DNA of 64,000 nt, from IMG/VR virus record IMGVR_UViG_3300020172_001601, positions 124,001 to 188,000 of that record, one strand, 5' to 3'. Shown piece by piece: positions 12,369 through 47,003 of this stretch. Made by a program: the position numbers and the translations under genes. The notes beneath the pieces were generated by a model, which worked only from the letters and a program-made list of their open reading frames with translations, searched no databases and was not told the DNA's origin. Numbering within the stretch: the first letter of the stretch is position 1; each line of letters starts with the position of its first letter.

Positions 12369-13517
12369 TTAAGTCTGACTGCGACGAATTTTACTGCTCG
12401 ACATATCGACCGGAGGCAAAATATCCGGTGGAATGATTTGGGCCATTTTCAAGAAGCGAGGGTCGATACCGTCGAGTCCTTCTTCATGCGAAGCCCTTCC
12501 ATCCATTATACGGTGGAAGACGATAAACTTGGCATCCTGACGAATCAAGGTTGCCACTACTTCGTCAATCTTGCCGTATTTCGGGTCGCTGATCCGCTTA
12601 AACGTGTCCCAGCCCACCACAAAGGTTGCGCCGTAGAAGTATTCGGCCTTCTGCATAAAGGTCGCCAGAGACGTAAAGTGAATGTCTCCACACCACGGAT
12701 TGACCTTTTGCTCCTCCAGATGAGCGATCCGCTCTCTGAGGTTGGTGTAATTGAAGGCAGGCTTATCGACGTTGTGGACACAGATTTCGAGATCGACTGG
12801 CCTTCCAGTAAGCTCGAACACCTTGGCTGCAATGCCAGCATGTCCGGGGTGGAGTGGATGGAACGAACCAGCGAAAATGACTCGGTTCTCTGGAAGGTCC
12901 ATTCCAGCGGGAATGCCAAGCGTGAGGGACTTCAACTGTCCGGTCAACAGTTTGAACATTTCCGGCGTGCCGGTCGTCATGACTTCTGTGACGTAATTGT
13001 TCTCGAAAATGTTGATGGCTTCAGCCCGAAAGCCGGATGCAAAAGCCAGCACACCGATTATAACACGGGCAACCAGAGTTTCTTCTTCTACTCGGTTGTG
13101 TCCACGACCAGTCAGGTCGATTTCGTAGGTTCGTGTGAATTCGCTGGTTTGAACAGCGATATAGGCGTGGTGTTCTCGTCCTTCACGCTCATGATCTTTG
13201 GCAAGCGAACAGGATGCGCCGATTCCGACAAGGCTTTCGGCGTTGTCGAGTCCAGAGTATTTGATGGCTTTCTGATATGCTGCCATTGCCAGATCACGAG
13301 CAGCGCCAGGGGAACAGTATTTGTCGGGAGTTCCCTTCACAAAGTTGTCGAACGACTTCTGATCGTATGGTACAATAGCTTCCAACACGGTGTTGGAACC
13401 TTGGCCATATCGGAGAAGTTCTCCGATGACTTCGGCCCCGCCCCCGGTGAGAGCAAGCACCGCTTTTTGCGGAGTTTGGTGGATTCTCAAGACCAGATCA
13501 CGTTCTGACAGCGACAT
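12369..13517 (-). CDS. CinA-like N-terminal domain fused to a NadD/cytidylyltransferase-like domain
   Basis: TGGG..GSNTVLEAIVPY N-domain; FAGSFHPLHPGH (HxGH), VVGWDTFKRI..PKY, SSSKIR. Confidence 0.75.
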   Translation of the reverse strand: MSLSERDLVLRIHQTPQKAVLALTGGGAEVIGELLRYGQGSNTVLEAIVPYDQKSFDNFVKGTPDKYCSPGAARDLAMAAYQKAIKYSGLDNAESLVGIGASCSLAKDHEREGREHHAYIAVQTSEFTRTYEIDLTGRGHNRVEEETLVARVIIGVLAFASGFRAEAINIFENNYVTEVMTTGTPEMFKLLTGQLKSLTLGIPAGMDLPENRVIFAGSFHPLHPGHAGIAAKVFELTGRPVDLEICVHNVDKPAFNYTNLRERIAHLEEQKVNPWCGDIHFTSLATFMQKAEYFYGATFVVGWDTFKRISDPKYGKIDEVVATLIRQDAKFIVFHRIMDGRASHEEGLDGIDPRFLKMAQIIPPDILPPVDMSSSKIRRSQT

Positions 13518-13668
13518 TTTTATGCTCCCGGTAAAATTGTTTCATCGGATTGTACCACGGTATTTGTGGGGTGTAAAACGTCAAACTGGTCTTGTGGCTT
13601 TTCGCAGCTTTCGGTAGAATCGGGCGAGTTTCATCCATCACGGCATCGTGACCAAAAGGAGTTAGCCG

Positions 13669-13869
13669 ATGTTAGTTCTGAGCAGAAAGAAAAACGAGTC
13701 GATTGTTATCGGGGAAAATATCCGAATCGTCGTCGTTGAAGTTCGTGGCGACAAAGTACGTCTGGGAATTGAAGCCCCAGGCGACGTTCCTGTTCATCGA
13801 CAGGAAGTCTATGACGCCATCCAAAACGACAAGGGAAAAGGGGATATTGAGCTAGATGGCAAATCCTAG
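13669..13869 (+). CDS. csrA: carbon storage regulator CsrA
   Basis: MLVLSRKKNESIVIG..VRLGIEAP..VPVHRQEVY. Confidence 0.95.
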   Translation: MLVLSRKKNESIVIGENIRIVVVEVRGDKVRLGIEAPGDVPVHRQEVYDAIQNDKGKGDIELDGKS

Positions 13870-14098
13870 AATATGCCCTCATTGCCACGGAGATATTCCC
13901 ACAGATCGAGATTTTACCTTTGATGAAAAGTTGAATCTCATCTGTGGGAAGTGTGGCAAAATAGCCTTTCCGACAACTTCGGAAGCGGAACTTGCGTTCT
14001 CGCAGCCCGGCCTGAAACAGCCATTGTCCCAAATACACCAGACTTATATGCCGAGGCATAGGACTGGACCTCATCACGACGATATTCCAGAAGGATAA
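13856..14098 (+). CDS. zinc-ribbon hypothetical protein
   Basis: CPHC...CGKC. Confidence 0.65.
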   Translation: MANPRICPHCHGDIPTDRDFTFDEKLNLICGKCGKIAFPTTSEAELAFSQPGLKQPLSQIHQTYMPRHRTGPHHDDIPEG

Positions 14099-14100
14099 TC

Positions 14101-14772: not shown

Positions 14773-14781
14773 AGGAGTCGC

Positions 14782-15039: not shown

Positions 15040-15054
15040 TCTTTTGCCGCCGAT

Positions 15055-17345: not shown

Positions 17346-17654
17346 ATGATACAAGCCTGCCCAAACTGCGGTCATGCCCTTCAGCGTGAATTGAAGGATG
17401 GCCTTACACATTGCTCCCATTGCAATCAAGTTTTTGATTCAAGCGATTTTAATCGTCTTTTATCAGCCGCTTGGCAAATACGCAGGGAGCATTTGTCGTT
17501 AGAACAAGTTAAATGGCAATGTAAATTGGGAGACGATTATTCCATATTGATATACACATTTGTCAGTGAATACGGCTATGCCCACGATGAGTTAATCAAA
17601 TTGTTGCGAAAACTCGGTGTGGCAAATAAAGCGTATATCGACTTCTCAGCCTAG
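17346..17654 (+). CDS. zinc-ribbon hypothetical protein
   Basis: CPNCG..CSHC. Confidence 0.7.
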   Translation: MIQACPNCGHALQRELKDGLTHCSHCNQVFDSSDFNRLLSAAWQIRREHLSLEQVKWQCKLGDDYSILIYTFVSEYGYAHDELIKLLRKLGVANKAYIDFSA

Positions 17655-17700
17655 ATCGAGCATTGCGGCTTTGGTATCCTCTTATTTCTGGAGGATAACT

Positions 17701-19136: not shown

Positions 19137-20144
19137 GTGAACGATATTCGCATTTTTGGCCTGGGATCGAGCGTTGAATACACAGAGCAAGTATGCAGGG
19201 CGTTATCGTTGAAGCGGTCTGACCACAAAGAGACGTGGCAGGACGATGACGAGCCTTACGTTCTCTCCCAAGAGAATGTTCGAGGCTGTGACGTATTCAT
19301 CGTGCAGAGTTTGTACTCCTGTCACAAAGAGCGTCTGGCAGACAAGTTCCTGAAACTTCTGTTATTCGCTCGTTCTCTTCGTGACGCATCGGCCCGGCGT
19401 ATTACGCTTGTGTTGCCGTATTTCGCATTTCAACGTCAGGATCGAAAAACCGAGTCCAGAGCGCCGGTATACACCAAATACATCCCTGAAATTGTCGAGG
19501 GCCTACTTCGTCCCGATGACCGCATTTTGACCATTGATGCTCACAACCTGAGCGCATATCAGTCGGGTTTCCGGTTGATGCTCGATCACCTTGAGGCCAA
19601 GCCAGTTGTCTGTGACTGGTTCAGCAATACTGCTGCCCGTTTTTGGCCTGAAGTCGATCTCGATAATCTTTGTTTTGCTTCACCCGATGAAGGTGGCGTT
19701 AAGCGTGTTGGCTTCTATCGAAAACGTGTTCAGTCTCAGATGAAGATCGAGATCAGCACGGCATCGGTCTACAAAACCCATGAGGGAAAGCAGATCGAGG
19801 CGCACGGCGTGATGGGTAATGTCCAGGGTAAAGACGTGTTCTTGATTGACGACATGATCTCGTCTGGAACCACGTTGGTAAAAGCAACCGATGCCATTGA
19901 GAAGGAAGGCGGCAAGGTTCGAGCCGCTATTGCTACGCACGGTTTATTCGTCGGTAACGCCAATGAGCGTATAGGGTTACTGCAAGAGCGTGGCATCAAG
20001 GTTATCGTCACCGATACTGTCCACACCAATAAGTTGGACCCAAAGTTGCAGAAGTCGCTGGTGGTTATTCCAACCGCTCCACTAATCGGTGAAGCGATTC
20101 GGTGTATTCACAACGAAGAGTCTGTCAGCAAATTACTTTCCTGA
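19137..20144 (+). CDS. prs: ribose-phosphate pyrophosphokinase
   Basis: ENVRGCDVFIVQS, PYFAFQRQDRK, SPDEGGVKR, LIDDMISSGTTL, THGLF. Confidence 0.95.
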   Translation: MNDIRIFGLGSSVEYTEQVCRALSLKRSDHKETWQDDDEPYVLSQENVRGCDVFIVQSLYSCHKERLADKFLKLLLFARSLRDASARRITLVLPYFAFQRQDRKTESRAPVYTKYIPEIVEGLLRPDDRILTIDAHNLSAYQSGFRLMLDHLEAKPVVCDWFSNTAARFWPEVDLDNLCFASPDEGGVKRVGFYRKRVQSQMKIEISTASVYKTHEGKQIEAHGVMGNVQGKDVFLIDDMISSGTTLVKATDAIEKEGGKVRAAIATHGLFVGNANERIGLLQERGIKVIVTDTVHTNKLDPKLQKSLVVIPTAPLIGEAIRCIHNEESVSKLLS

Positions 20145-30742: not shown

Positions 30743-30756
30743 CTAGGAAAAATAAA

Positions 30757-35192: not shown

Positions 35193-35230
35193 GTTTTACG
35201 TTTTGACGTTTTTGTGGTATGGTTAGTATC

Positions 35231-35890
35231 ATGAGCCATTTTCACAAATATCCTCGAACGTATCATCTGCCGTGGAGTCCTGGTGGGACTTCTGATGATC
35301 GCACATTGCCCAATGTGAAGCACTTCGAGGGTTTGGAAATCGTCGTCACGGAGAAGTTGGACGGAGAAAACACGTCCATGTACTCCGATCACATTCACGC
35401 ACGATCTCTTGATTCCAAGCACCATCCTTCTCGAACTTGGGTCAAGGTGTTGCACGGCCAGTTAAGTCATGAACTTCCTCCTGGTTGGAGGATTTGTGGC
35501 GAAAACGTGTATGCCTTGCATTCAATTCAATACACCAAGCTGGAAGGCTATTTCTACGTTTTCGGAATATACGACGACAAGAATCAATGCTTGTCGTGGG
35601 ACGAAACTGTGGAATATGCAACCATGCTCAATCTGCCGGTTGCCCCGGTCCTATATCGTGGGCCTTGGAATGAGGCAAAGGTCAAAGCCTGCTGGACAGG
35701 CATTTCTACTGCATCCCCAGGCGATCAACAGGAAGGCTATGTTCTGCGAGTGGCGCAGACATTCCCGTATGACGCTCAAGATGATGGGCTATTTTCACAA
35801 TACACTGCCAAATATGTCCGGGCCGAGCATGTCCAGACTGATGAGCATTGGCTTGAAAAGCCCGTGGTGCCGAACTTGCTAAGGAAATAA
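35231..35890 (+). CDS. RNA ligase family protein (Rnl2-like adenylation domain)
   Basis: KYPRTYHLPWSPG, TEKLDGEN, ICGEN, EGYVLR, AKYVR. Confidence 0.85.
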   Translation: MSHFHKYPRTYHLPWSPGGTSDDRTLPNVKHFEGLEIVVTEKLDGENTSMYSDHIHARSLDSKHHPSRTWVKVLHGQLSHELPPGWRICGENVYALHSIQYTKLEGYFYVFGIYDDKNQCLSWDETVEYATMLNLPVAPVLYRGPWNEAKVKACWTGISTASPGDQQEGYVLRVAQTFPYDAQDDGLFSQYTAKYVRAEHVQTDEHWLEKPVVPNLLRK

Positions 35891-36768: not shown

Positions 36769-36913
36769 CTTTACAATCAGACTTTTTCGTGGTAAAAATA
36801 TCCACGTCAAAAGCCGGATATTCGATATATTCGGCTAAAGTCTGATTGTGGTCTGCCGATATAACTTTCACCAGCAACTACAAACTACTTTCACCGAACT
36901 AGGAACCACTTAT

Positions 36914-38539
36914 ATGTCGAAGAAACTTGGAAAATCTGCCTATCCTGCTGGTCATGGCCCGAATGACTTTCAATGCTTCGGCCCGCCTGCTCTTGAAGAT
37001 GGCAACTTCGACACCTGCAAGATCGCCGATATGGGATCATTCTCGCAGGAAGAAAAGGACTCCAACAAGTATTACCACGCCTCTGTGGTGAAGTCCAAAA
37101 TCAGTGGCACTTTCTACACCTACTTCGAGTGGGGCCGAGTCGGTGCTTCTTCGCCTCAATTCCAAATGATTGAGTGTGCCAACGAAGCTGAAGCGCAGCG
37201 TGAATTCGCCGCTCAGTGTCATGAGAAGAACGACAAGCGTGGCGTATGGTCCACGGTTGCTGGCCTTCGCACTCTCACCGCCAAGCCGGGCAAAGACGTG
37301 TATCTGGTTCGTCAGTTGACGACCCGCAGCACTGGTCTGCCTGATGCCAAAACCATCAAGTATGTCGATCCCAATACTCCGAAGAAGCCTGATCCTAAAG
37401 CGGCTTCCGGTTCTGCTGGCGTTGTGAAGTCGGCTGCAAAGAAGGCTGATACTCACACCAGTCGATTGCTACAAGACCTGATTGGTGGAACGATCAAATA
37501 CACCCGTTCGGCGATGGCCGACAATAGCCTACCTACGCAGACGGCTATTGACCAAGCCCGCACCATTCTCACCGAGGCTCAGAAGCGTGTTGGCACTGTG
37601 GGTGATGACTTAGACGACCAGATTGGCGACAAAGAACTTCGGGTATATTCGTCCGAATTGTATCGTCGCATTCCGAAGGTCAAGGCAGTCGGTACGCCGG
37701 ACAGCGTGTGGATTCTGAGCGGCAACAATATCCTTTCCTGGCAACAGGACTTGGATGCCTTCGAGTCGGCATTGACTGGCCAAGCCCAAGTCGAAACTGA
37801 CAGTGAAACCGATCCGTTCCACGGTCTGCCTCTTCACATGGAGTGGATCGACCCCAAGAGCGATCTTGGCAAATTCCTCACCTTCTGGTGGCCGAAGGCG
37901 ACGGCAAATCGTCACGGTCATATTGGGACGATGAAGATCAAGAATCTGTGGAAGGTGGATCGTCACGGTGATGACGAGAAGTTCACCAAGACGCAGGATA
38001 AGATTTATTCCGAAATCGGCGGGGCCAAGATCAGCGAACGTCCGCTGTTCCAGCCTAGCGAACGACATGACGTTGACCCTAAGCGTCGTGAAGTATTCAG
38101 TGGTTCCAATACAGCCTTGTTGTTCCACGGAACTCGCTCCGTCAACGTGAAGGGCATTTTGGAGAAGTCACTGTTGCTTCCGAAGCAACTGGTCGGTGTC
38201 GCCATCAATGGTGCTATGTTCGGGCCGGGACTGTATTGGGCTGATGACTGGAAGAAGTCGGCGGGATATACGTCTCTCCGTGGCTCGATCTGGTCGGGTG
38301 GTGGCGGTTCGGTTGCAGGTCGTGCAGCGTTCATGTTCGCTGCTGACGTGACTGTTGGCGAGCCTCACGTTGCTCCTGGGCCTCGTGGTTATACTGCCCC
38401 GCCGAAGGGTACTCACTGTATCTTTGGTATGGGTCGCAACCACGGCAAGAAGCAATACAGTGGCGTCGAGAACAACGAATGGATCGTGTTCCAGAATACA
38501 CAAAGCCGTCTCAAATACCTTTGTGAATTTGAGACGTAA
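36914..38539 (+). CDS. poly(ADP-ribose) polymerase-like protein (WGR, regulatory and catalytic domains)
   Basis: FEWGRVG; SSELYRRIP; LLFHGT..GAMFGPGLYWAD..KSAGY..NNEWIVF (H-Y-E triad). Confidence 0.9.
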   Translation: MSKKLGKSAYPAGHGPNDFQCFGPPALEDGNFDTCKIADMGSFSQEEKDSNKYYHASVVKSKISGTFYTYFEWGRVGASSPQFQMIECANEAEAQREFAAQCHEKNDKRGVWSTVAGLRTLTAKPGKDVYLVRQLTTRSTGLPDAKTIKYVDPNTPKKPDPKAASGSAGVVKSAAKKADTHTSRLLQDLIGGTIKYTRSAMADNSLPTQTAIDQARTILTEAQKRVGTVGDDLDDQIGDKELRVYSSELYRRIPKVKAVGTPDSVWILSGNNILSWQQDLDAFESALTGQAQVETDSETDPFHGLPLHMEWIDPKSDLGKFLTFWWPKATANRHGHIGTMKIKNLWKVDRHGDDEKFTKTQDKIYSEIGGAKISERPLFQPSERHDVDPKRREVFSGSNTALLFHGTRSVNVKGILEKSLLLPKQLVGVAINGAMFGPGLYWADDWKKSAGYTSLRGSIWSGGGGSVAGRAAFMFAADVTVGEPHVAPGPRGYTAPPKGTHCIFGMGRNHGKKQYSGVENNEWIVFQNTQSRLKYLCEFET

Positions 38540-38638: not shown

Positions 38639-38774
38639 ATGCCTGACTACGGCCACCGAAACAACAAGGGTATTTTTCAAGATCGACATGAACTAAAGTC
38701 AGCCGCCGCTCTCTAGGTGATTGTGGCGGTTGACTGATGCGAAACTAAAACACACACTACAAAGGAACTTTCCA

Positions 38775-39569
38775 ATGAGCAATGCAAGTCTGGTCCAGGT
38801 CGTCGAGACGGTCGTGGATGAAAAGGTTCAAGCCGGTGAATTGTTCACCGCCCATGATGTTACCCTCGAAGTCCGTCAGCGTGGCCATCGGGCCGGTCAC
38901 GGCGAAGTCCGTGATGCTGTTCACGACTATTATGGTCGTGGTGGATTGGGCGTTGCATATTCTCGCACCAATATCTCGGTGCCGGGCGGCAACCCATATC
39001 TGTACCATCGTGGTGCAGATGATCCTTCGACATATCAGAACATTCGTGGTGGCGGCAACGTCAATGTTCCCAATCCTGCAACGATTACGGTTCCTCCGGT
39101 CGGCCAGAGCGGGGACGATGATGACGACGACGACGGGGCTGCACAAGCTGTGACTATTCCAGCCAGTCTTTTGGGGAGTCTAACTTCAGTTCCTCAGAAT
39201 TCGGTAGCTGGTATTGCAGTTTCCGGCGTGAACGGTCATGCTCGCAACAGTGCGACACGCACCAGCAACAAGCCGGGCAATACGAAAGCCCGCACAGTTG
39301 ACGGACGTGGAACGCTGAGTATCCCGGCTCCGATTATTCGGCAGCTTGGATTCAAGCCTCGCCAAAAAGTATACGCAGTGGCGGCGACCAACGGTGTGGA
39401 TATTGTTGACACGAAGCCTCCTGCATCTGCCGTATATGGAACGTATACGGTGGACGATCACGAACAGGTTCGTCTGACCCAGGCACTATTGCAACGTGCT
39501 GGTATTGCTGGTAAGCAATACGATGTTGAGCAAGCAAACAATAAGGTGGTAGTCAAACTTTCTAAGTAG
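38775..39569 (+). CDS. hypothetical protein with C-terminal AbrB/SpoVT-like repeats
   Basis: RTVDGRGTLSIPAPIIRQLGF; YTVDDHEQVRLTQALLQRAGI. Confidence 0.6.
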   Translation: MSNASLVQVVETVVDEKVQAGELFTAHDVTLEVRQRGHRAGHGEVRDAVHDYYGRGGLGVAYSRTNISVPGGNPYLYHRGADDPSTYQNIRGGGNVNVPNPATITVPPVGQSGDDDDDDDGAAQAVTIPASLLGSLTSVPQNSVAGIAVSGVNGHARNSATRTSNKPGNTKARTVDGRGTLSIPAPIIRQLGFKPRQKVYAVAATNGVDIVDTKPPASAVYGTYTVDDHEQVRLTQALLQRAGIAGKQYDVEQANNKVVVKLSK

Positions 39570-39683: not shown

Positions 39684-41351
39684 ATGAGCGATGAAGTCAT
39701 TACACTGTCGAGGGACGAATTCGAGGAAATCAAGGGCCAACTGGTTTTCCTTGATGCCGAATTGTCCCGCCTTATGGCACAACCTTTGGTGTACGCCACG
39801 GTTGTCAAGGCAGACAACAAGTTCAATCTGGAGGTTTTCGAGCAGGGCGACCGAATGCTCGTGATCGACAAAGAACTTCGCAAGCAGAAGAAGTTCTACG
39901 GCAAGATCGCATCTGCCGGTGTCGATGAAGACGGTTGGGTGATTCTGGAATATCCTACGGGCGGGCGTGACCGATTGAATATCGGCCTCAAGACCGAACT
40001 ACCGCAGGTTAAGTTGCTCGGCAAGGACGACGGCATGAATGTCGTCATCACCTTCGACGGGAAGCTGTTCGAGGTTCACGGTCTGCCCGGTGTCTTCTTC
40101 AAGCCTTCCGAAAACGTGAAGGTTGACATGGAGACGAAGCAGATTCACTCCAGCACGGGCGTCAGCAGCGCCGGTGACGTGGTTTACATCAAGTCCATCG
40201 TGGACGAGAATCACGTTGAAGTCGAAAGCAATGGCAGCAATCGTGTTGTCATCTTCGGCCTCGATCAGAAGATCGAACCAAGTGACCGTGTGATGTTGGA
40301 TAATTCCAACACGGTTATCCTTCGGGTGTTGGAACGTGACGGCAAGGATCGTTTCAACCTGACGGAAAATTCCGACACACAATGGTCTGATATTGCCGGG
40401 TTGGATGACGCCAAGGAACAACTGATCGAGGCGTTGGAAACTCCGTACAAGAACCCGGAGATTTACAAGTTCTACGGCATGGCCCCTCCGAAGGGTGTCC
40501 TGTTGTATGGACCGCAGGGTTGTGGGAAGACTTTGACCGCCAAGGCAGCAGCGGCTTCGCTGGCTCGCACACACGGTTCGGAGAACTTCCAGTCGGGATT
40601 CATCTACGTCAAGGGACCGGAACTCCTGTCCAAGTGGGTTGGTCAGACCGAACAAGAAATTCGTGGTCTGTTCACCCGTGGTCGGGAACACTTCCAGAAG
40701 CACGGCTATCCGGCCTTGCTGTTCATTGACGAAGCTGATGCCCTTCTGCCGATGAGAGGGACTGGCAAGAGCAGCGACGTGGAGAACACCATCGTCCCGC
40801 AGTTCTTGTCGGAAATGGACGGGTTGGAAGCGTCGGGTGTGATGGTTCTGTTGGCTACAAACCAACCGAAGCGTCTGGACCCAGCGGTTGTTCGTGAAGG
40901 TCGTATAGACCGTCACGTTAAGATCAGCCGTCCGAACGAAAAGAATGCCATCGAATACTTCCGCATTCACATGAGAGGTATGCCGTTGGCGAAGGGTGTG
41001 GAACCGGAAGAAGTGGCGAACCTCGCTGCTGCTGAAATCTTCCATGCTCAACGGGCGCTTTACCGTGTGACTCACCGTCAGACGGCAGAAATCTTCCGTC
41101 TGGCTGACGCCGTGACGGGAGCGATGATTGCTGGAGTGGTGGCGCAGGCCAAGTCCATCGCCATGAAGCGAGACTTGGCAAAGGGTGGCAAGCCGAAGGG
41201 TGTGTTGCCTGAAGACTTCGCTGTTTCGGTGAACAACCACTACATTCAGCACGCCGACCTGAACGCCACGTTCGATCTGGAAGACTTCTGTGATCGACTC
41301 GGCTTCGACCGGAAGTCGGTGAATGTCGAGAAGTTGGCTGTTGCCAAGTAA
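39684..41351 (+). CDS. ARC/Mpa-like AAA+ ATPase
   Basis: N-terminal coiled coil and OB-like region; KGVLLYGPQGCGKT, KGPELLSKWVG, FIDEAD, SSDVENTIVPQFLSEMDG, LDPAVVREGRID, VTGAMI. Confidence 0.85.
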   Translation: MSDEVITLSRDEFEEIKGQLVFLDAELSRLMAQPLVYATVVKADNKFNLEVFEQGDRMLVIDKELRKQKKFYGKIASAGVDEDGWVILEYPTGGRDRLNIGLKTELPQVKLLGKDDGMNVVITFDGKLFEVHGLPGVFFKPSENVKVDMETKQIHSSTGVSSAGDVVYIKSIVDENHVEVESNGSNRVVIFGLDQKIEPSDRVMLDNSNTVILRVLERDGKDRFNLTENSDTQWSDIAGLDDAKEQLIEALETPYKNPEIYKFYGMAPPKGVLLYGPQGCGKTLTAKAAAASLARTHGSENFQSGFIYVKGPELLSKWVGQTEQEIRGLFTRGREHFQKHGYPALLFIDEADALLPMRGTGKSSDVENTIVPQFLSEMDGLEASGVMVLLATNQPKRLDPAVVREGRIDRHVKISRPNEKNAIEYFRIHMRGMPLAKGVEPEEVANLAAAEIFHAQRALYRVTHRQTAEIFRLADAVTGAMIAGVVAQAKSIAMKRDLAKGGKPKGVLPEDFAVSVNNHYIQHADLNATFDLEDFCDRLGFDRKSVNVEKLAVAK

Positions 41352-41383
41352 TTGGTTGCAGTAAAAACGTAAAGTTACTTATG

Positions 41384-41423
41384 CTGCCCGGTCATCGTGG
41401 GGATGACCGGGCAGTTGTTGTTT
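41384..41423 (+). terminator. intrinsic terminator
   Basis: ctgcccggtcatc/gatgaccgggcag stem. Confidence 0.7.
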
Positions 41424-41456
41424 ACAGAACTCGTTTTTTGGGGTAGAATCCTCATC

Positions 41457-42863
41457 ATGTTCACTTTATCGGAAGCATACGAAGCATTAAATGGTCACGA
41501 CGAGTTTGCCGTAAAGGTTTACGACGGCAAGGTTTCGTTCGACTACATCGTTATCTTTCCTGGGTCTTTCGACGCTACCGATGATGAAATCCGACACCGT
41601 GCTTATCTCCTGTGGGAGCAAGCTGGTGGTCCGGTCGTGGACTCTGCACAATTCTGGTTTCAGGCAGAGCGAGACATTAAGCGTTTTGCTCATCTTCGTC
41701 GCAATTTTCGTGGCGTTACGTTTGACGTAGCGACCGGCGAAATGATCTCGCTGCCTCTTCACAAGTTTTTCAACGTCAACCAAATTCCAGAAACTCAATA
41801 TGATGTTATCAAGCATCATGATGCTGTTATCTATGAGAAGATGGATGGGACGATGATTCACTTCTTCCTACACAATGGGAAGTTAGAAGCTGCAACCTGC
41901 CGTTCGACTCATCACCCGCTCGCACATGAGGCGTTGGCGTTGGCGAAGAAGAACCGTATTGATGGGATGATTGTTGATACCATCAAGAACGGTTGGACTC
42001 CAATCTTTGAATATGTTGCTCCACACAATCAAGTTGTGGTTCAATATGCCGAGCCACGTTTGGTGCATCTGGTATCCCGTGAACGCAAGTCAGGAAAGTA
42101 TCATTACGATGATTCTTTTCCTGATAAGGCACGTCGTTTTGAATTCAAGTTTGGTCAGGTTTTCAATAACCTCGATCATACTGAGTTCGAGGGATATGTT
42201 TGTCATTTACCAAACATGGTCGTCAAGGCAAAGACTCCTTGGTACATGGAACGTCACCGGGCTGTTGATGCTTTGATGCGCCCGGCGTACAAGTTATACA
42301 AAATCGTATTCGATGGGTTGATGGACGACTTGATCGCCATCGCCACCGAGCCGTACAAGCCAGCGCTTCGTAAGGTATACGAAGAGGCTCAACGTGATCT
42401 TCTGAACGAGAAGAAGCGTGTAGAGGAACAATTTGCTGAGGCTGTGGAACTTTCCGAGAAGGCTCCGACTCTAACGGACGATCCAAATCCGTTGGCTGAT
42501 TTAGAGAAGGAAATCAATCTCCTGAAGGACCAGGGCAAGCGATTGGAGGCCATCAAGCGGGTTCGTGACTTCACGGGCCTTGGCTTGAGTGAAGCAAAGT
42601 CTTACGTTGAACGTGGTGTGTGGCCCCACGGTTTTATTCGACGTGATGAACAAGAGATTGAGGCTCGTCGGCTTATTCGCACCAAGGGCAGCTTCGCTGA
42701 TCTGGCTCGTGCAAAATATCCTGATGACTTCAACCTCATCATGGCTTTGTATCAAGGGCGTGATCCTAGCGATGGGATCAAAGAGCGGTTGATGGAGGTA
42801 TATCGTGTGAAATACCCTCAAAAACTTTACGCCAAACTTGATGATAACCATGAAGATGGGTAA
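41457..42863 (+). CDS. T4 Rnl1-like RNA ligase with DUF2934-like and L7/L12-CTD-like insertions
   Basis: RGVTFD..LPLHKFFN, YEKMDGTMI, TPIFEY, EGYV, KAKTPWY; EIRHRAYLLWEQAG..FWFQAERDI; LEAIKRVRDFTGLGLSEAKSYVE. Confidence 0.85.
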   Translation: MFTLSEAYEALNGHDEFAVKVYDGKVSFDYIVIFPGSFDATDDEIRHRAYLLWEQAGGPVVDSAQFWFQAERDIKRFAHLRRNFRGVTFDVATGEMISLPLHKFFNVNQIPETQYDVIKHHDAVIYEKMDGTMIHFFLHNGKLEAATCRSTHHPLAHEALALAKKNRIDGMIVDTIKNGWTPIFEYVAPHNQVVVQYAEPRLVHLVSRERKSGKYHYDDSFPDKARRFEFKFGQVFNNLDHTEFEGYVCHLPNMVVKAKTPWYMERHRAVDALMRPAYKLYKIVFDGLMDDLIAIATEPYKPALRKVYEEAQRDLLNEKKRVEEQFAEAVELSEKAPTLTDDPNPLADLEKEINLLKDQGKRLEAIKRVRDFTGLGLSEAKSYVERGVWPHGFIRRDEQEIEARRLIRTKGSFADLARAKYPDDFNLIMALYQGRDPSDGIKERLMEVYRVKYPQKLYAKLDDNHEDG

Positions 42864-43167: not shown

Positions 43168-43836
43168 ATGTCAGAAATCAAAATCAATAGCGTGACAAAG
43201 GCGACCGACCTCCGTTGGCTCAATCTGTATAACGTCGATTATACATCGAAAGACGGAAAGCAAGGTCAATGGACATTCGCCAGTCGCAAGACTCCACAAC
43301 CGGCAGGCTCGCCCCTCGTGGCCGATGCTGTTGTGATTATCCCACTGCTGAAGGATGGTCGCAAACGGAAGCTGGTCAGCATCCGGGAATTCCGTATCCC
43401 CCTGGGAGACTATGAATATGGTTTCCCGGCTGGTCTTTATGACCATAACGAAACAGCCGAAGCTGTCGCCAAGCGTGAGTTGAAAGAAGAAACAGGACTC
43501 AAGCTGACAAAGGTTCTTTACGTCAGCCCGCCGTGTGTTTCTTCGGCTGGTCTTTCTGATGAGTCGGTAGTGTATGTCGTGTGTGAATGCACTGGAGAAG
43601 TCAGCAGTGCTGGCACTGAAGGATCGGAAGACATTAAGGTTGGACTGCTCGATATTGACGGGGTTCGGGCGCTTCGCCAGTCTCCCAACAAGATTTCGGC
43701 CAAGGCTATTACCTTTCTGCTCATGTTCGATGGGATGAACAAGATTGCATGGCCGAAGCACCTTCGCCAAGAACAACCCAAGAAGGCGAAAAAGGCAAAG
43801 CCGGAAGCTCTACAAACGGCTGATCCTGTGGTATGA
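43168..43836 (+). CDS. Nudix hydrolase, ADP-ribose pyrophosphatase (NudF)-like
   Basis: EFRIPLG..YGFPAGLYDHNETAEAVAKRELKEETG, SAGLSDE. Confidence 0.85.
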   Translation: MSEIKINSVTKATDLRWLNLYNVDYTSKDGKQGQWTFASRKTPQPAGSPLVADAVVIIPLLKDGRKRKLVSIREFRIPLGDYEYGFPAGLYDHNETAEAVAKRELKEETGLKLTKVLYVSPPCVSSAGLSDESVVYVVCECTGEVSSAGTEGSEDIKVGLLDIDGVRALRQSPNKISAKAITFLLMFDGMNKIAWPKHLRQEQPKKAKKAKPEALQTADPVV

Positions 43837-43861: not shown

Positions 43862-44239
43862 ATGTCTTGCTTAACTGATGACAAAAATACATTGGGTCTT
43901 GTTCGAGTTGAAACCGACAAGGTTATTGCTGCTTGCAACAAAAAACTCAATAGTATTTACGCATATCGCTCCGATGCTCGTCGCCAATACTGCCAGCAAT
44001 GGCTAACCGCTGCCACAAAAAGTTGGCAGCGGTTTTGGCGTTTTCTTGGTTATAAAAAACCAGTGTTAAGAAACGCATTGGAAGCCTTCTACGGTGGGCA
44101 GTTTCCTACGTCTTTTGACGTAAGCATCACTTACGGACTTCAAGAGCAAAACTGCAAAGATTTGCTTCGTGCTGCCAAAGCAACGAATAATTCAACAATG
44201 TGGATTTCCAACGAAGGCGCAAGAGCCTGTAATCTGTGA
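43862..44239 (+). CDS. hypothetical protein
   Basis: 125 aa ORF after a promoter-like motif. Confidence 0.65.
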   Translation: MSCLTDDKNTLGLVRVETDKVIAACNKKLNSIYAYRSDARRQYCQQWLTAATKSWQRFWRFLGYKKPVLRNALEAFYGGQFPTSFDVSITYGLQEQNCKDLLRAAKATNNSTMWISNEGARACNL

Positions 44240-44246
44240 GGCAAAT

Positions 44247-44909
44247 ATGAAATCTGAAGACATGCTTAACAAGTTACATGAGGCTCTGGCCCTCTTGCCT
44301 TCGATACTTACAAATCGAGAGGCATGGGATAGCCTTATTGTGAATCGTAGGAAGCCATACACCTACAGAGTATTCACTACCTTGCCGAATGGTCTTCGAC
44401 TGTGCCTACACAAGTTCGATCCGTGTCACACCCACGAAGCGTTCGCTCACCCGCATCCTTGGCCCGGAGCGTTTGTAATACTCCAAGGCAAATACAAGAT
44501 GAATGTCGGGTATTCTTGTGGTGGTCGTCAAGACTCCGCACCGGCTGAAGTCACTACGTTGATCCTCAATAGGCATTCTTCTTATGAGATCATCAACCCG
44601 CTGACGTGGCATTCGGTCATTCCTTTGGAACCGACATATACGGTGATGGTCAATGACTCGCCGTGGGACACTGAGACGGCAGCACATAAAGATGTGCGCA
44701 CCACCAAGGGCAAAGACCTGGATAAAATGCCAGAACCAGAGTTGCTGGAACATCTGAGTATTTTCCAACGTCTCGTGGAAGAATGGCTTTTGACTAAGCC
44801 GGAGATTCCACAGCCAATAGAGAATGTTAGGTTTTTAATGAAAGCTGTTCGTCGCCAAGTCCCGCAACATTTGATTGATGAGGATAAAAATGCTTCCAGT
44901 CCTCAATGA
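44247..44909 (+). CDS. hypothetical protein, cupin-like
   Basis: LCLHKF..HPHPWP..WHSV pattern. Confidence 0.55.
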   Translation: MKSEDMLNKLHEALALLPSILTNREAWDSLIVNRRKPYTYRVFTTLPNGLRLCLHKFDPCHTHEAFAHPHPWPGAFVILQGKYKMNVGYSCGGRQDSAPAEVTTLILNRHSSYEIINPLTWHSVIPLEPTYTVMVNDSPWDTETAAHKDVRTTKGKDLDKMPEPELLEHLSIFQRLVEEWLLTKPEIPQPIENVRFLMKAVRRQVPQHLIDEDKNASSPQ

Positions 44910-45399
44910 CACAATTGAATGCTCATGCACAGATTGTGTTTCGGCGTGCAAGAAAAAGCCCGGCTGGTTCGCCCCAGGTGAAATCAAGCCAGCCGCCGAT
45001 CTGTTGGGTATGTCTGAGAAAGATTTCTTTGACAAATACCTGTCAGTTGATTATTGGGGCAACCCGGACTCATGGATGTTTGTATTGTCCCCGGCCACAC
45101 TGAATGCTACTCCGGGGCAAGAGTTTCCTTTGGACCCTACTGGACAATGCGTCTTCTTGAAGGAAGATGGCAAGTGTTCAATTCATGAAGCCAAGCCGTA
45201 TGAATGCAAGGCATACGATCACAGGAAGAAAGAAAGCGAAGCAGACCTAGAGCAAGCCTCGAAGCAGCATTTGTCTGTCGCTGAAGCCTGGGTGTCTCAC
45301 AAGGATTACATTGCCAATCTGCTTGGCAGGGAACCAGAAGTGTTGCCGCCGAACCCACTGGAAATGTTGCAGTTTCTTTTTAGCATGGTGGGCAAATGA
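44890..45399 (+). CDS. YkgJ family cysteine-cluster protein
   Basis: CSCTDCVSACK, CVFL..GKCSIHEAKPYECK. Confidence 0.8.
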   Translation: MLPVLNDTIECSCTDCVSACKKKPGWFAPGEIKPAADLLGMSEKDFFDKYLSVDYWGNPDSWMFVLSPATLNATPGQEFPLDPTGQCVFLKEDGKCSIHEAKPYECKAYDHRKKESEADLEQASKQHLSVAEAWVSHKDYIANLLGREPEVLPPNPLEMLQFLFSMVGK

Positions 45400-45806
45400 A
45401 ACTCTCCGAAACCAAATTTCGAGTATTGTTCAATGAGCATTTGCTCAAGCTACTCGATCTTGAAAAAGAACAAATAGCGTGGATCGCTCGTGAAGCGGCC
45501 AACCTGATGACCACTGATAAGTGGGAATCCAATATCGAAGCCCACATGATGGACGAAGAGTTGGATTGTTGGCAGCACGACATGGTTACACGAGACGGCG
45601 AAACAATTGTCTTGGAAGGCGTTCCATATCCAAAAGACTTTCTTATTTTGTGGACGCCTCATTATCCTGATACGTTGCCAGAGCCGGGAAGTCCTGACAC
45701 CAAGTATATGGATTTCCCAACCGATTTCGCACACTTGCTCGAAAAGGATCGCAAAGAGCTAGGTGTGTTCAAGGTTGGCGAAGGTGTTGACTATGGACGC
45801 AAATAA
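45396..45806 (+). CDS. hypothetical protein
   Basis: ATGA overlap. Confidence 0.65.
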   Translation: MKLSETKFRVLFNEHLLKLLDLEKEQIAWIAREAANLMTTDKWESNIEAHMMDEELDCWQHDMVTRDGETIVLEGVPYPKDFLILWTPHYPDTLPEPGSPDTKYMDFPTDFAHLLEKDRKELGVFKVGEGVDYGRK

Positions 45807-45996
45807 ACCTTGCAACCCTGACCATAATGGCGAATGTTTAGTGTGTGATGGCTGGCTGTCACATTGCGCACTAGACAGATTGCGAGCGGGCGACTTCAAG
45901 TATGAAACCTTGGATGAACTGCTGGTAATGTTCAAGGATTTCTTAACAGAAGACGAAGTTCGCAATTTACGAACACAATACGGAACAAACAAATGA
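45793..45996 (+). CDS. hypothetical protein
   Basis: small Cys-containing ORF. Confidence 0.55.
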   Translation: MDANKPCNPDHNGECLVCDGWLSHCALDRLRAGDFKYETLDELLVMFKDFLTEDEVRNLRTQYGTNK

Positions 45997-47003
45997 TTAC
46001 CCTAAAAGATAAAGTCCGAGGCAATTTCCTGGGTGTCGCTATTGGCGATGCACTCGGCAAGCCAGTTGAAATGTGCAAACCTCAGCATATTGCTGAGAAG
46101 TATGGTCGCATTGAAGACTACCAAAACTGTAGTTCTCACAAGTATTTCGAGAACGACCATAAAGGCACCACGACCGACGACTGGCAGCTTACCAAGGCCG
46201 TTGCTCGTGCCATGATTACGACCGGCAAGTTCGATCTGGACGAGATTGCTGTTGAACACGGTAAGGAATTCGCAATCAGCGTTCGTGGCTGGGGCGGCTC
46301 AACCAGAGAAGCTGTTGCTCGTATTGTTGAAGGAATTCACTGGAAAGAGGCTGGCAAGACCACCGAGAAGAATCGAGGCTTGGGCAACGGCGTTTCCATG
46401 AAGGCGTCACCAGCGGGGCTTTATATGGCCCTGACGAATCCAAGCTGTGACAACCCGCCTTGGGACGATCATGTGAAGAATATCGCTGATATGGCGATTA
46501 TGACGCACTACACGAGTATTGCAGTGACGAGTGGTCTGGCTCATGCCTTCGCCACGCTGAAGTGTTTCAGTGTCACCCCTGAAACCTTCGACCCTGATTC
46601 GTTCGTGAATGTCGTTATTGGCGCTGCTCAGATCGGACGCCAGTATTGTCCTGGGACGCTCAATGACGATATGCAGGTTCGTTTTGAGCGATTGAAGAAG
46701 CCATATACCCCGCAGGGCATTATTGACCCAGATGAGTTCGGCGGTGGCTCCTGCTATGTCTACGACAGCTTGCCGTTTACATACGCATGGTTCCTTCGCA
46801 ATCCACAAAGCATCGAAAGTCTGTATGACTGTGTGAGTGCTGGTGGTGACGCTGACAGTAATGGCTCGATGCTGGCTGGGCTATTGGGAGCATTGCACGG
46901 TGCAAGCATTTTCCCGGATCATCTGGTTGATGGGCTGAAGAATAAAGACGAGGTTCTGGAGATCGCCGACCAGTTTTACGAGAAATTTGCCAAGTCGAAG
47001 TGA
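45993..47003 (+). CDS. ADP-ribosylglycohydrolase (DraG/ARH family)
   Basis: AIGDALGKPVE, TTDDWQL, GNGVSMK, GGDADSNGSMLAGLLGA. Confidence 0.92.
   Translation: MITLKDKVRGNFLGVAIGDALGKPVEMCKPQHIAEKYGRIEDYQNCSSHKYFENDHKGTTTDDWQLTKAVARAMITTGKFDLDEIAVEHGKEFAISVRGWGGSTREAVARIVEGIHWKEAGKTTEKNRGLGNGVSMKASPAGLYMALTNPSCDNPPWDDHVKNIADMAIMTHYTSIAVTSGLAHAFATLKCFSVTPETFDPDSFVNVVIGAAQIGRQYCPGTLNDDMQVRFERLKKPYTPQGIIDPDEFGGGSCYVYDSLPFTYAWFLRNPQSIESLYDCVSAGGDADSNGSMLAGLLGALHGASIFPDHLVDGLKNKDEVLEIADQFYEKFAKSK

What the first reader, a model, noticed from the sequence alone, without database searches (positions are those of the whole stretch)
12369..47003. Possible complete writer-eraser-recycler ADP-ribose/NAD+ cycle
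The window encodes a PARP (writer, 36914), an ARH/DraG (eraser, 45993), a NudF-like Nudix (ADP-ribose to AMP and ribose-5-phosphate, 43168), Prs (ribose-5-phosphate to PRPP, 19137) and a NadD-like adenylyltransferase (12369). Established: some phages rebuild NAD+ to resist NAD-depleting defences (NARP pathways). No nicotinamide phosphoribosyltransferase is visible here. Inference: a reversible ADP-ribosylation signalling system with NAD+ salvage, distinct from NARP1/2.
Basis: inference. Interest (0 to 1): 0.62.

Follow-up and report, generated by a model that had tools for sequence, protein, structure and literature searches.

The report
Huge-phage PARP, eraser and NAD genes
A huge freshwater phage carries a eukaryote-like PARP enzyme in a conserved gene block with an enzyme that removes ADP-ribose and one that breaks it down, plus separate NAD-supply genes; the parts are real, but they do not form a single new NAD-recycling pathway.

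Summary

**Writer, eraser and ADP-ribose hydrolase: supported.**
- The PARP has the WGR, helical and catalytic layout of human PARP1-3, with an invariant H-Y-E triad.
- In seven related huge-phage genomes it always sits near an AbrB-like protein and an eraser (ARH in six, microbial PARG plus NADAR in one).
- A NUDT5-like Nudix and an AAA ATPase are nearby in five of the seven, among RNA and DNA ligases.

**Recycling: only loosely linked.**
- Prs is a canonical PRPP synthetase, not the NARP1 enzyme Adps. It travels with FolD and a kinase.
- The "NadD-like" gene is a fusion of a CinA/PncC-fold domain and a NadD-fold domain. Its nucleotidyltransferase motifs are intact, but it scores far below the NadD cut-off, and the deamidase residues appear to be missing.
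- The missing Nampt is uninformative. The record ends before the region where its complete relative encodes NadV. Another relative has PncB, NadE and a stand-alone NadD-like gene.

**Verdict.** This is a conserved ADP-ribosylation turnover block plus ordinary NAD-salvage genes, as already described for "NAD-jumbo phages". It is not a dedicated closed cycle. The conserved block itself was not described in the papers I searched.

The parts
36848..38539 (+). PARP (writer). N-terminal tail, WGR domain, helical regulatory domain and ART catalytic domain. The likely start is the ATG at 36914 (541 aa).
   Evidence: Pfam WGR 43 bits and PARP 72 bits. The AF2 model (pLDDT 83.4) matches the human PARP1 WGR-HD-CAT chain and PARP2 over about 550 columns (E 4e-23, TM 0.64-0.71). 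H405, Y441 and E522 are invariant in 31 homologues.
38721..39569 (+). Conserved PARP-linked protein 'X'. It has a conserved N-terminal domain, an acidic Asp/Glu-rich linker and a C-terminal AbrB/SpoVT/MazE-like region.
   Evidence: An orthologue lies 1.7-6 kb downstream of PARP in all six other huge-phage genomes (27-53% identity; alignment). The fold hits are weak but consistent: MazE_antitoxin E 6.5e-4, below the cut-off, and the top seven PDB profile hits are all SpoVT/AbrB/Abh at E 0.014-0.16.
39684..41351 (+). AAA+ ATPase with a weak match to the proteasomal-ATPase OB domain.
   Evidence: Pfam AAA E 4e-33 and Prot_ATP_ID_OB_C E 0.002. An orthologue lies between PARP and Nudix in five of seven genomes.
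41397..42863 (+). T4 Rnl1-like RNA ligase with DUF2934 and a segment resembling the C-terminus of ribosomal protein L7/L12.
   Evidence: Pfam RNA_lig_T4_1 E 1.5e-16. An orthologue is present in G001.
43168..43836 (+). NUDT5/NudF/NudE-like Nudix, the predicted ADP-ribose pyrophosphatase.
   Evidence: Pfam NUDIX. The best solved relative is the human NUDT5 ADP-sugar pyrophosphatase (E 2e-15), followed by NudE, NudF and ADPRases. The Nudix box is complete (read from the alignment). NCBIfam NudE scores 50 bits against a cut-off of 169. The gene lies next to or near ARH in G001, L062 and L063.
45993..47003 (+). ADP-ribosylglycohydrolase of the ARH/DraG family (eraser).
   Evidence: Pfam ADP_ribosyl_GH 156.6 bits. 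The closest solved structures are MJ1187 and DraG, and the three metal-site motif regions are conserved in the alignment. It is the only copy in the record. Orthologues lie within 7 kb of PARP in six of seven genomes.
35219..35890 (+). RNA ligase (PF09414) just upstream of PARP.
   Evidence: Pfam E 6e-34. It is conserved upstream of PARP in G001, L051 and L062.
19137..20144 (+). Canonical class I ribose-phosphate pyrophosphokinase (Prs), in a block with FolD (18217-19080) and an AAA_33 kinase (17617-18204).
   Evidence: TIGR01251 212 bits against a cut-off of 113. It aligns over its full length with bacterial and human PRPS structures at E 1e-38. In a tree it falls outside the Adps clade with 100/100 support. 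The kinase-FolD-Prs block is conserved in LR756511.1 and L053; in G001 only FolD-Prs is found (no kinase hit).
12369..13517 (-). Two-domain protein: a CinA/PncC-fold N-terminal domain (aa 1 to about 200) fused to a NadD-fold HIGH-motif nucleotidyltransferase (aa about 212-382).
   Evidence: The AF2 model has pLDDT 92.7. Foldseek's best hits are NaMN adenylyltransferases (E 2e-6) and CinA proteins (E 1.6e-5). H223, H226, S373, S374 and R378 are invariant in 30 homologues. Three of the 30 homologues hit Pfam CinA. Sources name homologues NaMN adenylyltransferase and/or PncC. The orthologue in G001 is 44% identical over the full length.

Best explanation
The window comes from a huge freshwater phage (probably about 500 kb in full). 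It holds two functionally separate sets of NAD-related genes, not one dedicated cycle.

**(1) A conserved ADP-ribosylation turnover block.**
- The writer is a PARP1-3-type enzyme with WGR, an autoinhibitory helical domain and an H-Y-E catalytic domain. I infer that it is switched on by nucleic-acid breaks, as its eukaryotic relatives are.
- I infer that it ADP-ribosylates, and probably poly-ADP-ribosylates, itself or nearby factors during infection. One candidate is the AbrB-like acidic protein that always accompanies it.
- The ARH removes the modification. In one relative a microbial PARG plus NADAR takes this position.
- The NUDT5-like Nudix splits the released ADP-ribose into AMP and ribose-5-phosphate.
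- The block sits among RNA and DNA ligases and a pyrimidine-dimer glycosylase, so a role in repair of, or signalling about, damaged phage or host nucleic acid is the most likely setting.

**(2) NAD and nucleotide supply genes elsewhere.**
- These are a canonical PRPP synthetase (with FolD and a kinase) and a CinA-fold/NadD-fold fusion, probably a pyridine-mononucleotide adenylyltransferase.
- They would act together with a nicotinamide or nicotinate phosphoribosyltransferase. Complete relatives encode one, and this truncated record may simply have lost it. Host enzymes may also contribute.

**What is shown and what is inferred.**
- Shown: domain identities, catalytic motifs, folds and conserved synteny.
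- Inferred: substrates, break activation, poly- versus mono-ADP-ribosylation, and any metabolic flow from ADP-ribose back to NAD+.
For: **Domains and motifs**
- Domain calls.
- PARP fold and triad.
- ARH motifs.
- Nudix closest to NUDT5 and ADPRases.

**Conserved neighbourhood**
- Seven huge-phage genomes were compared (PARP 57-71% identical to the window's): G000, G001 (= L061), LR756511.1, L053, L051, L062 and L063.
- PARP with protein X: 7 of 7.
- An eraser within 10 kb: 7 of 7 (ARH in 6; PARG plus NADAR in 1).
- Nudix: 5 of 7. AAA: 5 of 7.
- Sources.

**Wider ADP-ribose toolkit in relatives**
- Microbial PARG, Macro and SIR2 are present in both full-length relatives, G001 (rated 100% complete) and LR756511.1 (595 kb).

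**Supply genes**
- Prs is canonical and outside the Adps clade. It stays next to FolD, with the kinase too except in G001.
- Fusion protein fold and motifs.
- Its stand-alone homologue in LR756511.1 co-occurs with PncB and NadE, which would complete a Preiss-Handler route if it acts as NadD.
- G001 has NadV, and its only other CTP_transf protein is CoaD.
- G000 is collinear only with G001 positions 5-297 kb. G001's NadV (398 kb), SIR2 (328 kb), and PARG and its second Macro (524 kb) all lie beyond that.
- G000 also encodes an NAD-dependent LigA.
Against: - No enzymatic or expression data exist. Only DNA runs hold this phage.
- The seven genomes are related and broadly collinear, so co-occurrence partly reflects shared ancestry rather than independent selection.
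- Distant cultured-phage PARPs (XacN1, FBKp34) and two bacterial homologues have no annotated eraser nearby.
- In this window about 2.1 kb of other genes separates Nudix from ARH.
- Known ARH enzymes act on Arg-, Ser- or PAR-linked ADP-ribose. Whether this one matches the PARP's products is unknown.
- The NadD-like domain fails the NadD equivalog cut-off. At profile level it is no closer to NadD than to PPAT.
Confidence: 0.55

Rival explanations
1. The five genes form one dedicated closed cycle: PARP to ARH to Nudix to Prs to an adenylyltransferase. It regenerates NAD+ from the phage's own ADP-ribosylation products and counters NAD-depleting defences by a route distinct from NARP1/2.
For: - All five genes have syntenic orthologues in G001.
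- The PARP and the CinA/NadD fusion appear to share at least 12 contigs, judged by identical longest-contig lengths.
- The chemistry from ADP-ribose to ribose-5-phosphate to PRPP is stoichiometrically coherent.
- Relatives add NadV or PncB/NadE.
Against: - The genes lie in three clusters over 35 kb, one on the opposite strand.
- Prs is always tied to FolD (with the kinase in three of four genomes), which points to general nucleotide synthesis.
- No phosphoribosyltransferase is present in this record.
- With NadV, the scheme is the known NARP2/KVP40-type salvage, not a new route.
- LR756511.1 lacks the NUDT5-like Nudix, and L053 shows none within 10 kb of its PARP.
- A phage PARP would consume NAD+, which is an odd core for a counter-depletion system.
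Confidence: 0.15
2. Takeover and counter-defence reading. The PARP modifies host proteins or nucleic acids to hijack the cell, as T4 Alt/ModA/ModB do. The ARH and Nudix act independently on host-made ADP-ribose adducts or ADPR-derived immune signals such as DarT-type DNA modification or products of Thoeris and other NADases.
For: - Published comparative work proposes host-targeting roles for phage ARTs and PARTs, and proposes that phage ARH domains deconjugate macromolecular adducts (PMC7824862, PMC9503650).
- A bacterial homologue 57% identical lies next to a reverse transcriptase and a PemK toxin, in what looks like a conflict island.
- Relatives carry Macro, PARG, NADAR and SIR2 genes.
Against: - The PARP keeps the full break-sensing WGR-HD-ART layout of PARP1-3. 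Host-hijacking ARTs are typically simple ARTs.
- The block is embedded among ligases and a DNA glycosylase.
- The eraser always travels with the writer in the phage genomes sampled.
Confidence: 0.2
3. The genes are unrelated accessory genes of a very large phage. Their co-occurrence only reflects vertical inheritance and genome collinearity within one clade.
For: - G000 is collinear with G001 over about 260 kb, so almost any gene pair co-occurs.
- Distant PARP-bearing phages lack the partner genes.
Against: - Intervening genes vary, while PARP, protein X and an eraser persist.
- In L051 the eraser type is swapped to PARG plus NADAR, which argues for selection on the function rather than on the gene.
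- Nudix and ARH are directly adjacent or overlapping in G001 and L063, and one small gene apart in L062.
Confidence: 0.1

Closest known systems
Eukaryotic DNA-break-activated PARPs (PARP1/2/3) with PARG/ARH3 erasers and NUDT5
   Same: - The PARP has the same WGR, helical-domain and ART layout, and the H-Y-E triad.
- An ARH-family hydrolase is encoded nearby, and a microbial PARG in relatives.
- The Nudix's best solved match is NUDT5 itself.
- The genes lie next to ligases.
   Different: - It lacks the zinc fingers and BRCT domain of PARP1.
- It is encoded by a virus of prokaryotes.
- Its constant partners are an AbrB-like protein and an AAA ATPase. No HPF1-like gene turned up in the domain scans, but I did not search for one directly.
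- No activity has been measured.
Bacterial PARP/PARG systems (for example Herpetosiphon PARP and Deinococcus-type PARG; from my own knowledge, plus PMC5966428 listed)
   Same: A prokaryote-associated WGR-PARP is found together with PARG_cat_microb in relatives.
   Different: - Here the gene is carried by a phage.
- The main neighbouring eraser is ARH, not PARG.
- A Nudix gene is coupled to it.
NAD-jumbo phages and NadV/NadM/NadR salvage (PMC11662467, PMC7824862, PMC9503650); NARP2 and KVP40 NadV plus NatV (10.1101/2024.02.11.579819)
   Same: - Large phages combine NAD-synthesis genes with NAD consumers, including PARP1-like proteins and NAD-dependent ligase.
- G001 has NadV, and LR756511.1 has PncB plus NadE.
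- From my own knowledge, the KVP40 work already proposed the route from ADP-ribose through a Nudix to ribose-5-phosphate, PRPP, NMN and NAD+.
   Different: - No NatV/NadM-type bifunctional NMNAT-Nudix is present.
- The candidate adenylyltransferase is instead a CinA-fold/NadD-fold fusion.
- The phosphoribosyltransferase is missing from this incomplete record.
NARP1 (Adps plus Namat)
   Same: A Prs-family protein is present.
   Different: - The window's Prs is full length (335 aa) and keeps the N-terminal domain and C-terminal segment.
- It clusters with bacterial Prs, not with the 259-294-aa Adps proteins that sit directly upstream of Namat.
- No Namat gene is adjacent.
DraT/DraG-type reversible mono-ADP-ribosylation
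   Same: An ARH/DraG-family hydrolase is paired with an ADP-ribosyltransferase.
   Different: - The writer is a PARP-clade H-Y-E enzyme, not an R-S-E DraT.
- The DraG equivalog scores only 70 bits against a cut-off of 337.

Membership tests
PARP1-3-type (clade 1) poly(ADP-ribose) polymerases | H-Y-E catalytic triad in the ART domain | tested here: met
   H405, Y441 and E522 (numbered from the ATG at 36914) are invariant in 31 homologues. They align to the PARP1 H, Y and E positions.
PARP1-3-type (clade 1) poly(ADP-ribose) polymerases | WGR domain plus the helical regulatory (HD) domain N-terminal to the ART domain | tested here: met
   Pfam WGR scores 43 bits. The AF2 model aligns over about 550 columns to the PARP1 WGR-HD-CAT chain and to PARP2 (E 4e-23, TM 0.64-0.71). 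It aligns over about 400 columns to HD+ART constructs (TM about 0.73).
PARP1-3-type (clade 1) poly(ADP-ribose) polymerases | Break-stimulated synthesis of ADP-ribose chains | not testable with these tools
   This needs an enzyme assay. PARG genes in relatives are only indirect support for chain synthesis.
ADP-ribosylglycohydrolase (ARH/DraG, PF03747) | Full-length match above the curated cut-off, with the binuclear metal-site motifs | tested here: met
   156.6 bits against a cut-off of 26.2, covering profile positions 3-287 of 287. The N-terminal, central Asp-Asp and C-terminal Gly-Gly-Asp motif regions are conserved against MJ1187.
ADP-ribosylglycohydrolase (ARH/DraG, PF03747) | Membership of a characterised specificity group (DraG, Tri1, ARH3) | tested here: not met
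   DraG TIGR02662 scores 70 bits against a cut-off of 337. Tri1 scores 32 against 490. The bond it cleaves is unknown.
ADP-ribose pyrophosphatase Nudix (NudF/NudE/NUDT5) | Complete Nudix box, with ADPRases as the closest relatives | tested here: met
   The Nudix box is intact. The top solved matches are NUDT5 (E 2e-15), NudE, NudF and ADPRases.
ADP-ribose pyrophosphatase Nudix (NudF/NudE/NUDT5) | Score above an equivalog cut-off | tested here: not met
   NudE scores 50 bits against 169. ADP-ribose diphosphatase scores 22 against 248.
Class I ribose-phosphate pyrophosphokinase (Prs) | Full-length match above the cut-off, including the N-terminal domain, the RQDR segment and the ribose-5-phosphate loop | tested here: met
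   TIGR01251 scores 212 against 113, and Pribosyltran_N 104 bits. The motifs are visible in alignments to E. coli and Thermus Prs.
NARP1 Adps | Membership of the Adps clade and adjacency to Namat | tested here: not met
   The Adps clade is separated with 100/100 support. Identity to Adps is 19-26%, against 28-32% to bacterial Prs. No PF04095 gene is present in the record. The tree has only 11 sequences.
NadD (NaMN adenylyltransferase) | HxGH and SxxxxR nucleotidyltransferase motifs and the NadD fold | tested here: met
   H223, H226, S373, S374 and R378 are invariant. The best Foldseek hits are NadD structures at E 2e-6.
NadD (NaMN adenylyltransferase) | Score above the NadD equivalog cut-off | tested here: not met
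   TIGR00482 scores 22 bits against 112. A family profile against the PDB gives NadD and PPAT equally weak matches at motif level.
PncC/CinA NMN deamidase | CinA fold | tested here: met
   Foldseek hits CinA proteins at E 1.6e-5 and weaker. Three of 30 homologues hit Pfam CinA.
PncC/CinA NMN deamidase | Residues tied to activity in PMC3855486: Ser31 of block P-I, Ser48, and Tyr58/Lys63 of block P-III | tested here: inconclusive
   This is a by-eye comparison with the published blocks against the sequence and family consensus. The Ser31 position appears to be Ala. S41 may match Ser48. Y51 is present, but no conserved Lys follows it. This suggests an inactive or repurposed domain, but I made no structure-based alignment.
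NARP2 (Nampt plus bifunctional NMNAT/Nudix) | Nampt/NadV present | tested here: not met
   Absent from the 340-kb record. The record is 69% complete and ends before the syntenic position of G001's NadV, so absence from the phage itself is not shown.
NARP3 (PnuC plus NadR) | PnuC transporter present | tested here: not met
   No PF04973 match in G000, G001 or LR756511.1. NadR was not searched for.

The most novel reading that the evidence does not exclude
A clade of huge freshwater and sediment phages runs a eukaryote-like poly(ADP-ribose) damage response during infection.

- A WGR-HD-ART PARP senses breaks in phage or host nucleic acid and builds ADP-ribose chains on itself and on its ever-present AbrB-like acidic partner.
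- This helps organise the neighbouring ligases and the AAA ATPase.
- ARH or PARG then strips the chains, and a NUDT5-like Nudix recovers AMP and ribose-5-phosphate.
- The phage's own NAD-salvage genes sustain the NAD+ cost.

This would be the first PAR-based signalling system shown in a virus of prokaryotes. It would also be a candidate relative of the ancestors of eukaryotic PARP1-3.
Probability: 0.3. Interest if true: 0.75.

Novelty: new variant of a known kind. Interest (0 to 1): 0.5.

Why it matters
PARP-type enzymes in phages have been listed in surveys, but none has a known role. A block of writer, eraser and ADP-ribose hydrolase that stays together across several huge phages gives a concrete, testable system. 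With it one can ask whether PARP1-3-style, break-triggered ADP-ribosylation exists outside eukaryotes, and what it does in infection.

The analysis also corrects the simpler story. The NAD-supply genes here are ordinary salvage and nucleotide genes of a truncated genome, not a new NAD-reconstitution pathway.

The CinA-fold/NadD-fold fusion occurs widely in huge phages and also in some archaea and Planctomycetes. It is an uncharacterised candidate enzyme of pyridine-nucleotide metabolism.

Tried and rejected
- **Near-identical phage records.** Megablast of 20 kb against cultured and GenBank phages found nothing.
- **Nampt in this record.** The PF04095 search was negative. I rejected this as evidence of absence, because the record is truncated relative to G001.
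- **NadV on a longer contig of this phage.** I looked among NadV homologues for one on the 390,142-bp contig that carries an identical PARP. The top 120 hits were saturated with sequences at least 54% (mostly over 70%) identical, many from Planctomycetes, and none came from that contig, so the result is uninformative.
- **Prs as Adps (NARP1).** Rejected on length, domain content, identity and a small tree.
- **PncA, PnuC, Macro, PARG, SIR2 and NadE in G000.** All negative, but they are present in relatives, mostly in regions that G000 lacks.
- **Amber recoding.** Two tRNA-CUA genes suggested it, but table 11 gives 87% coding density. Reading TAG as sense gives no region-specific gain in open frames beyond what removing any stop codon gives. 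I used no alternative genetic code.
- **Promoter and terminator scan.** The number of sites was not above the number in shuffled sequence.
- **Protein X.** The atlas search gave only a sub-threshold lead.
- **Expression.** No RNA run holds this phage. I did not use read laying, because contig-level DNA runs cannot show expression.
- **Complex prediction.** Not used. I make no binding claim strong enough to justify it.
- **Double counting.** L061 is the same genome as G001 (100% identity over 21.7 kb), so I counted it once.

Full report
**Where the window lies.** The window is positions 124,001-188,000 of a 340,341-bp IMG/VR virus record that is linear and estimated 69% complete. My gene calls under table 11 cover 87% of the record, mostly on one strand. 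The phage is near-identical only to a freshwater metagenome. Partial matches occur in freshwater, lake, sediment and aquaculture samples. No RNA run holds it. No cultured phage is close at the DNA level.

**The observation.**
- 12369-13517(-), 382 aa: a cytidylyltransferase-like domain in the C-terminal half only.
- 19137-20144(+): Prs.
- 36848-38539(+): WGR plus the PARP catalytic domain.
- 43168-43836(+): NUDIX.
- 45993-47003(+): ADP-ribosylglycohydrolase.

The record has no PF04095 (NAPRTase/Nampt) match.

**The PARP.**
- A model built on 31 homologues has pLDDT 83.4.
- It matches the WGR-HD-CAT chain of human PARP1 bound to a DNA break, and PARP2, over about 550 columns (E 4e-23; TM 0.64-0.71).
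- It matches HD+ART constructs over about 400 columns.
- His405, Tyr441 and Glu522, numbered from the ATG, are invariant and align to the PARP1 triad.
- The protein therefore has the layout of the break-activated PARP1-3 group.
- The family is large in metagenomes. There are 816 hits, and at least 120 are 56% or more identical. Many lie on contigs of 0.3-0.67 Mb.

**ARH and Nudix.**
- The ARH matches PF03747 end to end (156.6 bits) and keeps the metal-site motif regions seen in MJ1187 and DraG.
- It reaches no specificity-level model, so the bond it cleaves is unknown.
- The Nudix has a complete Nudix box. Its closest solved relatives are human NUDT5 (E 2e-15), NudE, NudF and ADP-ribose pyrophosphatases.
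- It scores below the equivalog cut-offs.

**The conserved neighbourhood.** I compared PARP neighbourhoods in seven huge-phage genomes:
- this record (G000);
- G001, a 532,729-bp IMG/VR record rated 100% complete, which is the same genome as the 673-kb scaffold behind L061;
- LR756511.1 (595 kb);
- contigs of 669, 543, 346 and 191 kb (L051, L053, L062, L063).

The results were as follows.
- PARP is followed within 1.7-6 kb by an orthologue of the 282-aa protein at 38721-39569 in all seven.
- An eraser lies within 10 kb in all seven. It is ARH in six. In L051 it is a microbial PARG plus NADAR.
- The NUDT5-like Nudix and an AAA ATPase are present in five.
- Nudix and ARH are directly adjacent or overlapping in G001 and L063, and separated by one small gene in L062.
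- In this window about 2.1 kb of other ORFs (44169-45996) has come between them.
- PF09414 and Rnl1-type RNA ligases, an ATP-dependent DNA ligase (L053), a sigma-like protein, an HD protein and, here, a DenV-type glycosylase surround the block.

The 282-aa partner has a conserved N-terminal domain, an Asp/Glu-rich linker and a C-terminal region. That region weakly but consistently resembles AbrB/SpoVT/MazE DNA-binding domains.

Two homologues in bacterial contexts lack a nearby eraser. One lies beside a reverse transcriptase and PemK. The distant PARPs of the cultured phages XacN1 and FBKp34 also lack one.

The seven genomes are related and collinear, so this is not seven independent observations. 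However, intervening genes turn over and the eraser type is swapped in one genome. Both argue that the writer-eraser pairing is maintained by selection.

**Prs.**
- The protein aligns end to end with bacterial and human PRPP synthetases (E about 1e-38).
- It passes TIGR01251 and keeps the N-terminal domain, the RQDR segment and the ribose-5-phosphate loop.
- Four cultured-phage 'Prs' proteins that sit directly upstream of Namat genes, the NARP1 arrangement, are 259-294 aa long and lack both termini. They are 19-26% identical to the window's protein.
- In an 11-sequence tree they form a clade separated with 100/100 support from bacterial-type and huge-phage Prs.
- Prs travels with FolD in G001, and with FolD and an AAA_33 kinase in LR756511.1 and L053. 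Its distance from PARP varies from 8 to 17 kb.
- The simplest reading is PRPP supply for nucleotide synthesis in general, with NAD+ as one possible product.

**The 'NadD-like' gene.**
- A model has pLDDT 92.7.
- Foldseek finds two domains. NaMN adenylyltransferases are the best hits for the C-terminal half (E 2e-6), and CinA/PncC proteins match the N-terminal half (E 1.6e-5).
- The HxGH histidines and the C-terminal Ser-Ser...Arg motif are invariant in 30 homologues.
- Three of the 30 homologues hit Pfam CinA.
- Sources call homologues NaMN adenylyltransferase and/or NMN deamidase.
- By sequence score the protein is far below the NadD cut-off. At profile level it is no closer to NadD than to PPAT.
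- I compared the sequence by eye with the published PncC blocks (PMC3855486). The serine of the first block and the lysine of the third do not appear conserved, so deamidase activity is doubtful.
- Homologues occur on many huge-phage contigs. At least 12 share a longest-contig length with a PARP hit. Homologues also occur in Methanococcoides, Methanolobus and a planctomycete.

**The missing Nampt.**
- G000 positions 80-340 kb are collinear with G001 positions 5-297 kb.
- G001 encodes a NadV-type enzyme at 398 kb (608 bits to NF006629). It also has SIR2 at 328 kb, PARG and one of its two Macro genes at 524 kb, and a second ARH. Except for the second ARH and the other Macro gene, these lie outside the collinear part.
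- LR756511.1 has a PncB-type enzyme, NadE, and a stand-alone 190-aa homologue of the NadD-fold domain (33% identical). If that homologue acts as NadD, this is a complete Preiss-Handler set.
- In G001 the only other cytidylyltransferase-family protein is CoaD. The fusion is therefore the only candidate partner for NadV there.
- Absence of Nampt from this record is therefore uninformative, and the clade's NAD-supply genes are the ordinary ones.
- G000 also has an NAD-dependent DNA ligase.

**Comparison with the literature.**
- PARP-type ARTs in a few jumbo phages, rare phage ARH domains, and NadV/NadM/NadR salvage are described in PMC7824862 and PMC9503650.
- 'NAD-jumbo phages' that combine NAD synthesis with consumers, including PARP1-like proteins, are described in PMC11662467.
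- NARP1 and NARP2 are described in 10.1101/2024.02.11.579819, NARP3 in PMC13464706, and the Adps structure in PMC13586617.
- From my own knowledge, the KVP40 study (Lee, Li and Miller 2017) already proposed the loop from ADP-ribose through a Nudix to ribose-5-phosphate, PRPP, NMN and NAD+.
- I found no description of the conserved block of PARP, AbrB-like protein, AAA, Nudix and ARH. My search covers open-access papers only.

**Verdict.**
- The writer, eraser and ADP-ribose hydrolase part is a real, conserved block and the most interesting element.
- The 'complete recycler distinct from NARP1/2' is not supported as a discrete system. It is a plausible metabolic connection between that block and standard salvage and nucleotide genes.
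- All substrate assignments, break activation, and poly- versus mono-ADP-ribosylation remain inferences.

Noticed in passing
window 58011-58084 and 58708-58778 (+): Two tRNA genes with a CUA anticodon (amber suppressors, labelled Pyl by ARAGORN) flank a 200-aa ORF. A tRNA-Met lies at 30670-30743. TAG is still used as a stop codon by many window genes, and table 11 gives 87% coding density.
   Followed up: partly
window 57075-57584 (+): A second Nudix gene (169 aa; PF00293 72 bits). Its weak best matches are to MutT and to the Nudix half of bifunctional NMNAT/Nudix (NadM-type) enzymes. G001 has an orthologue 59% identical.
   Followed up: partly
L052 10001-11620 (4.03-Mb bacterial contig): A PARP homologue 57% identical lies in a bacterial chromosome, directly after a reverse-transcriptase gene and before a PemK-type toxin. 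This looks like a conflict or defence island.
   Followed up: no
window 39684-41351 (+): An AAA+ ATPase with a weak match to the proteasomal-ATPase OB domain is conserved between PARP and Nudix in five of seven huge-phage genomes. Its role is unknown.
   Followed up: partly
window 41397-42863 (+): An Rnl1-like RNA ligase carries an N-terminal DUF2934 and a segment matching the C-terminal domain of ribosomal protein L7/L12. A separate small L12-like ORF sits near the Nudix gene in L051.
   Followed up: no
L004 1477-3174 (-) = LR756511.1 around 160 kb: The PncB-type NAPRTase of the relative has an unexplained N-terminal extension of about 175 aa. No isochorismatase/PncA match exists anywhere in that genome.
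   Followed up: partly
G000:C1:59266-60072 (outside the window): An NAD-dependent DNA ligase (728-aa frame; PF01653 120 bits) is present in this phage but not in G001 or LR756511.1.
   Followed up: no
window 36770-36799, 39572-39600, 41421-41449, 47044-47072 (+); hairpin at 41383-41415: A recurring promoter-like motif (TTTACA, 17-18 nt, then a TATAAT-like hexamer) occurs at or near gene boundaries around the PARP block. A 14-bp-stem terminator-like hairpin lies between the AAA and Rnl1 genes. The total number of sites is not above the number in shuffled sequence.
   Followed up: no
L005 979-2361 (G001 NadV) and L064: G001's NadV is 72-78% identical to Planctomycetes enzymes (Fimbriiglobus, Schlesneria). 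One PARP homologue sits in a contig whose neighbouring gene families look planctomycete-like (my impression, not tested). The CinA/NadD fusion occurs in Pirellulimonas. Together these are a weak hint that the hosts are Planctomycetota.
   Followed up: no
window 34764-35192 (+): A DenV-type pyrimidine-dimer DNA glycosylase lies just upstream of the RNA ligase and PARP. It has no orthologue in G001.
   Followed up: no
window 8734-12361: The CinA/NadD fusion gene lies beside a SAM methyltransferase on the same (minus) strand (11720-12361). A second minus-strand methyltransferase (8734-9654) and a plus-strand family-2 glycosyltransferase (10234-11019) lie just upstream. This context is not obviously related to NAD.
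   Followed up: no
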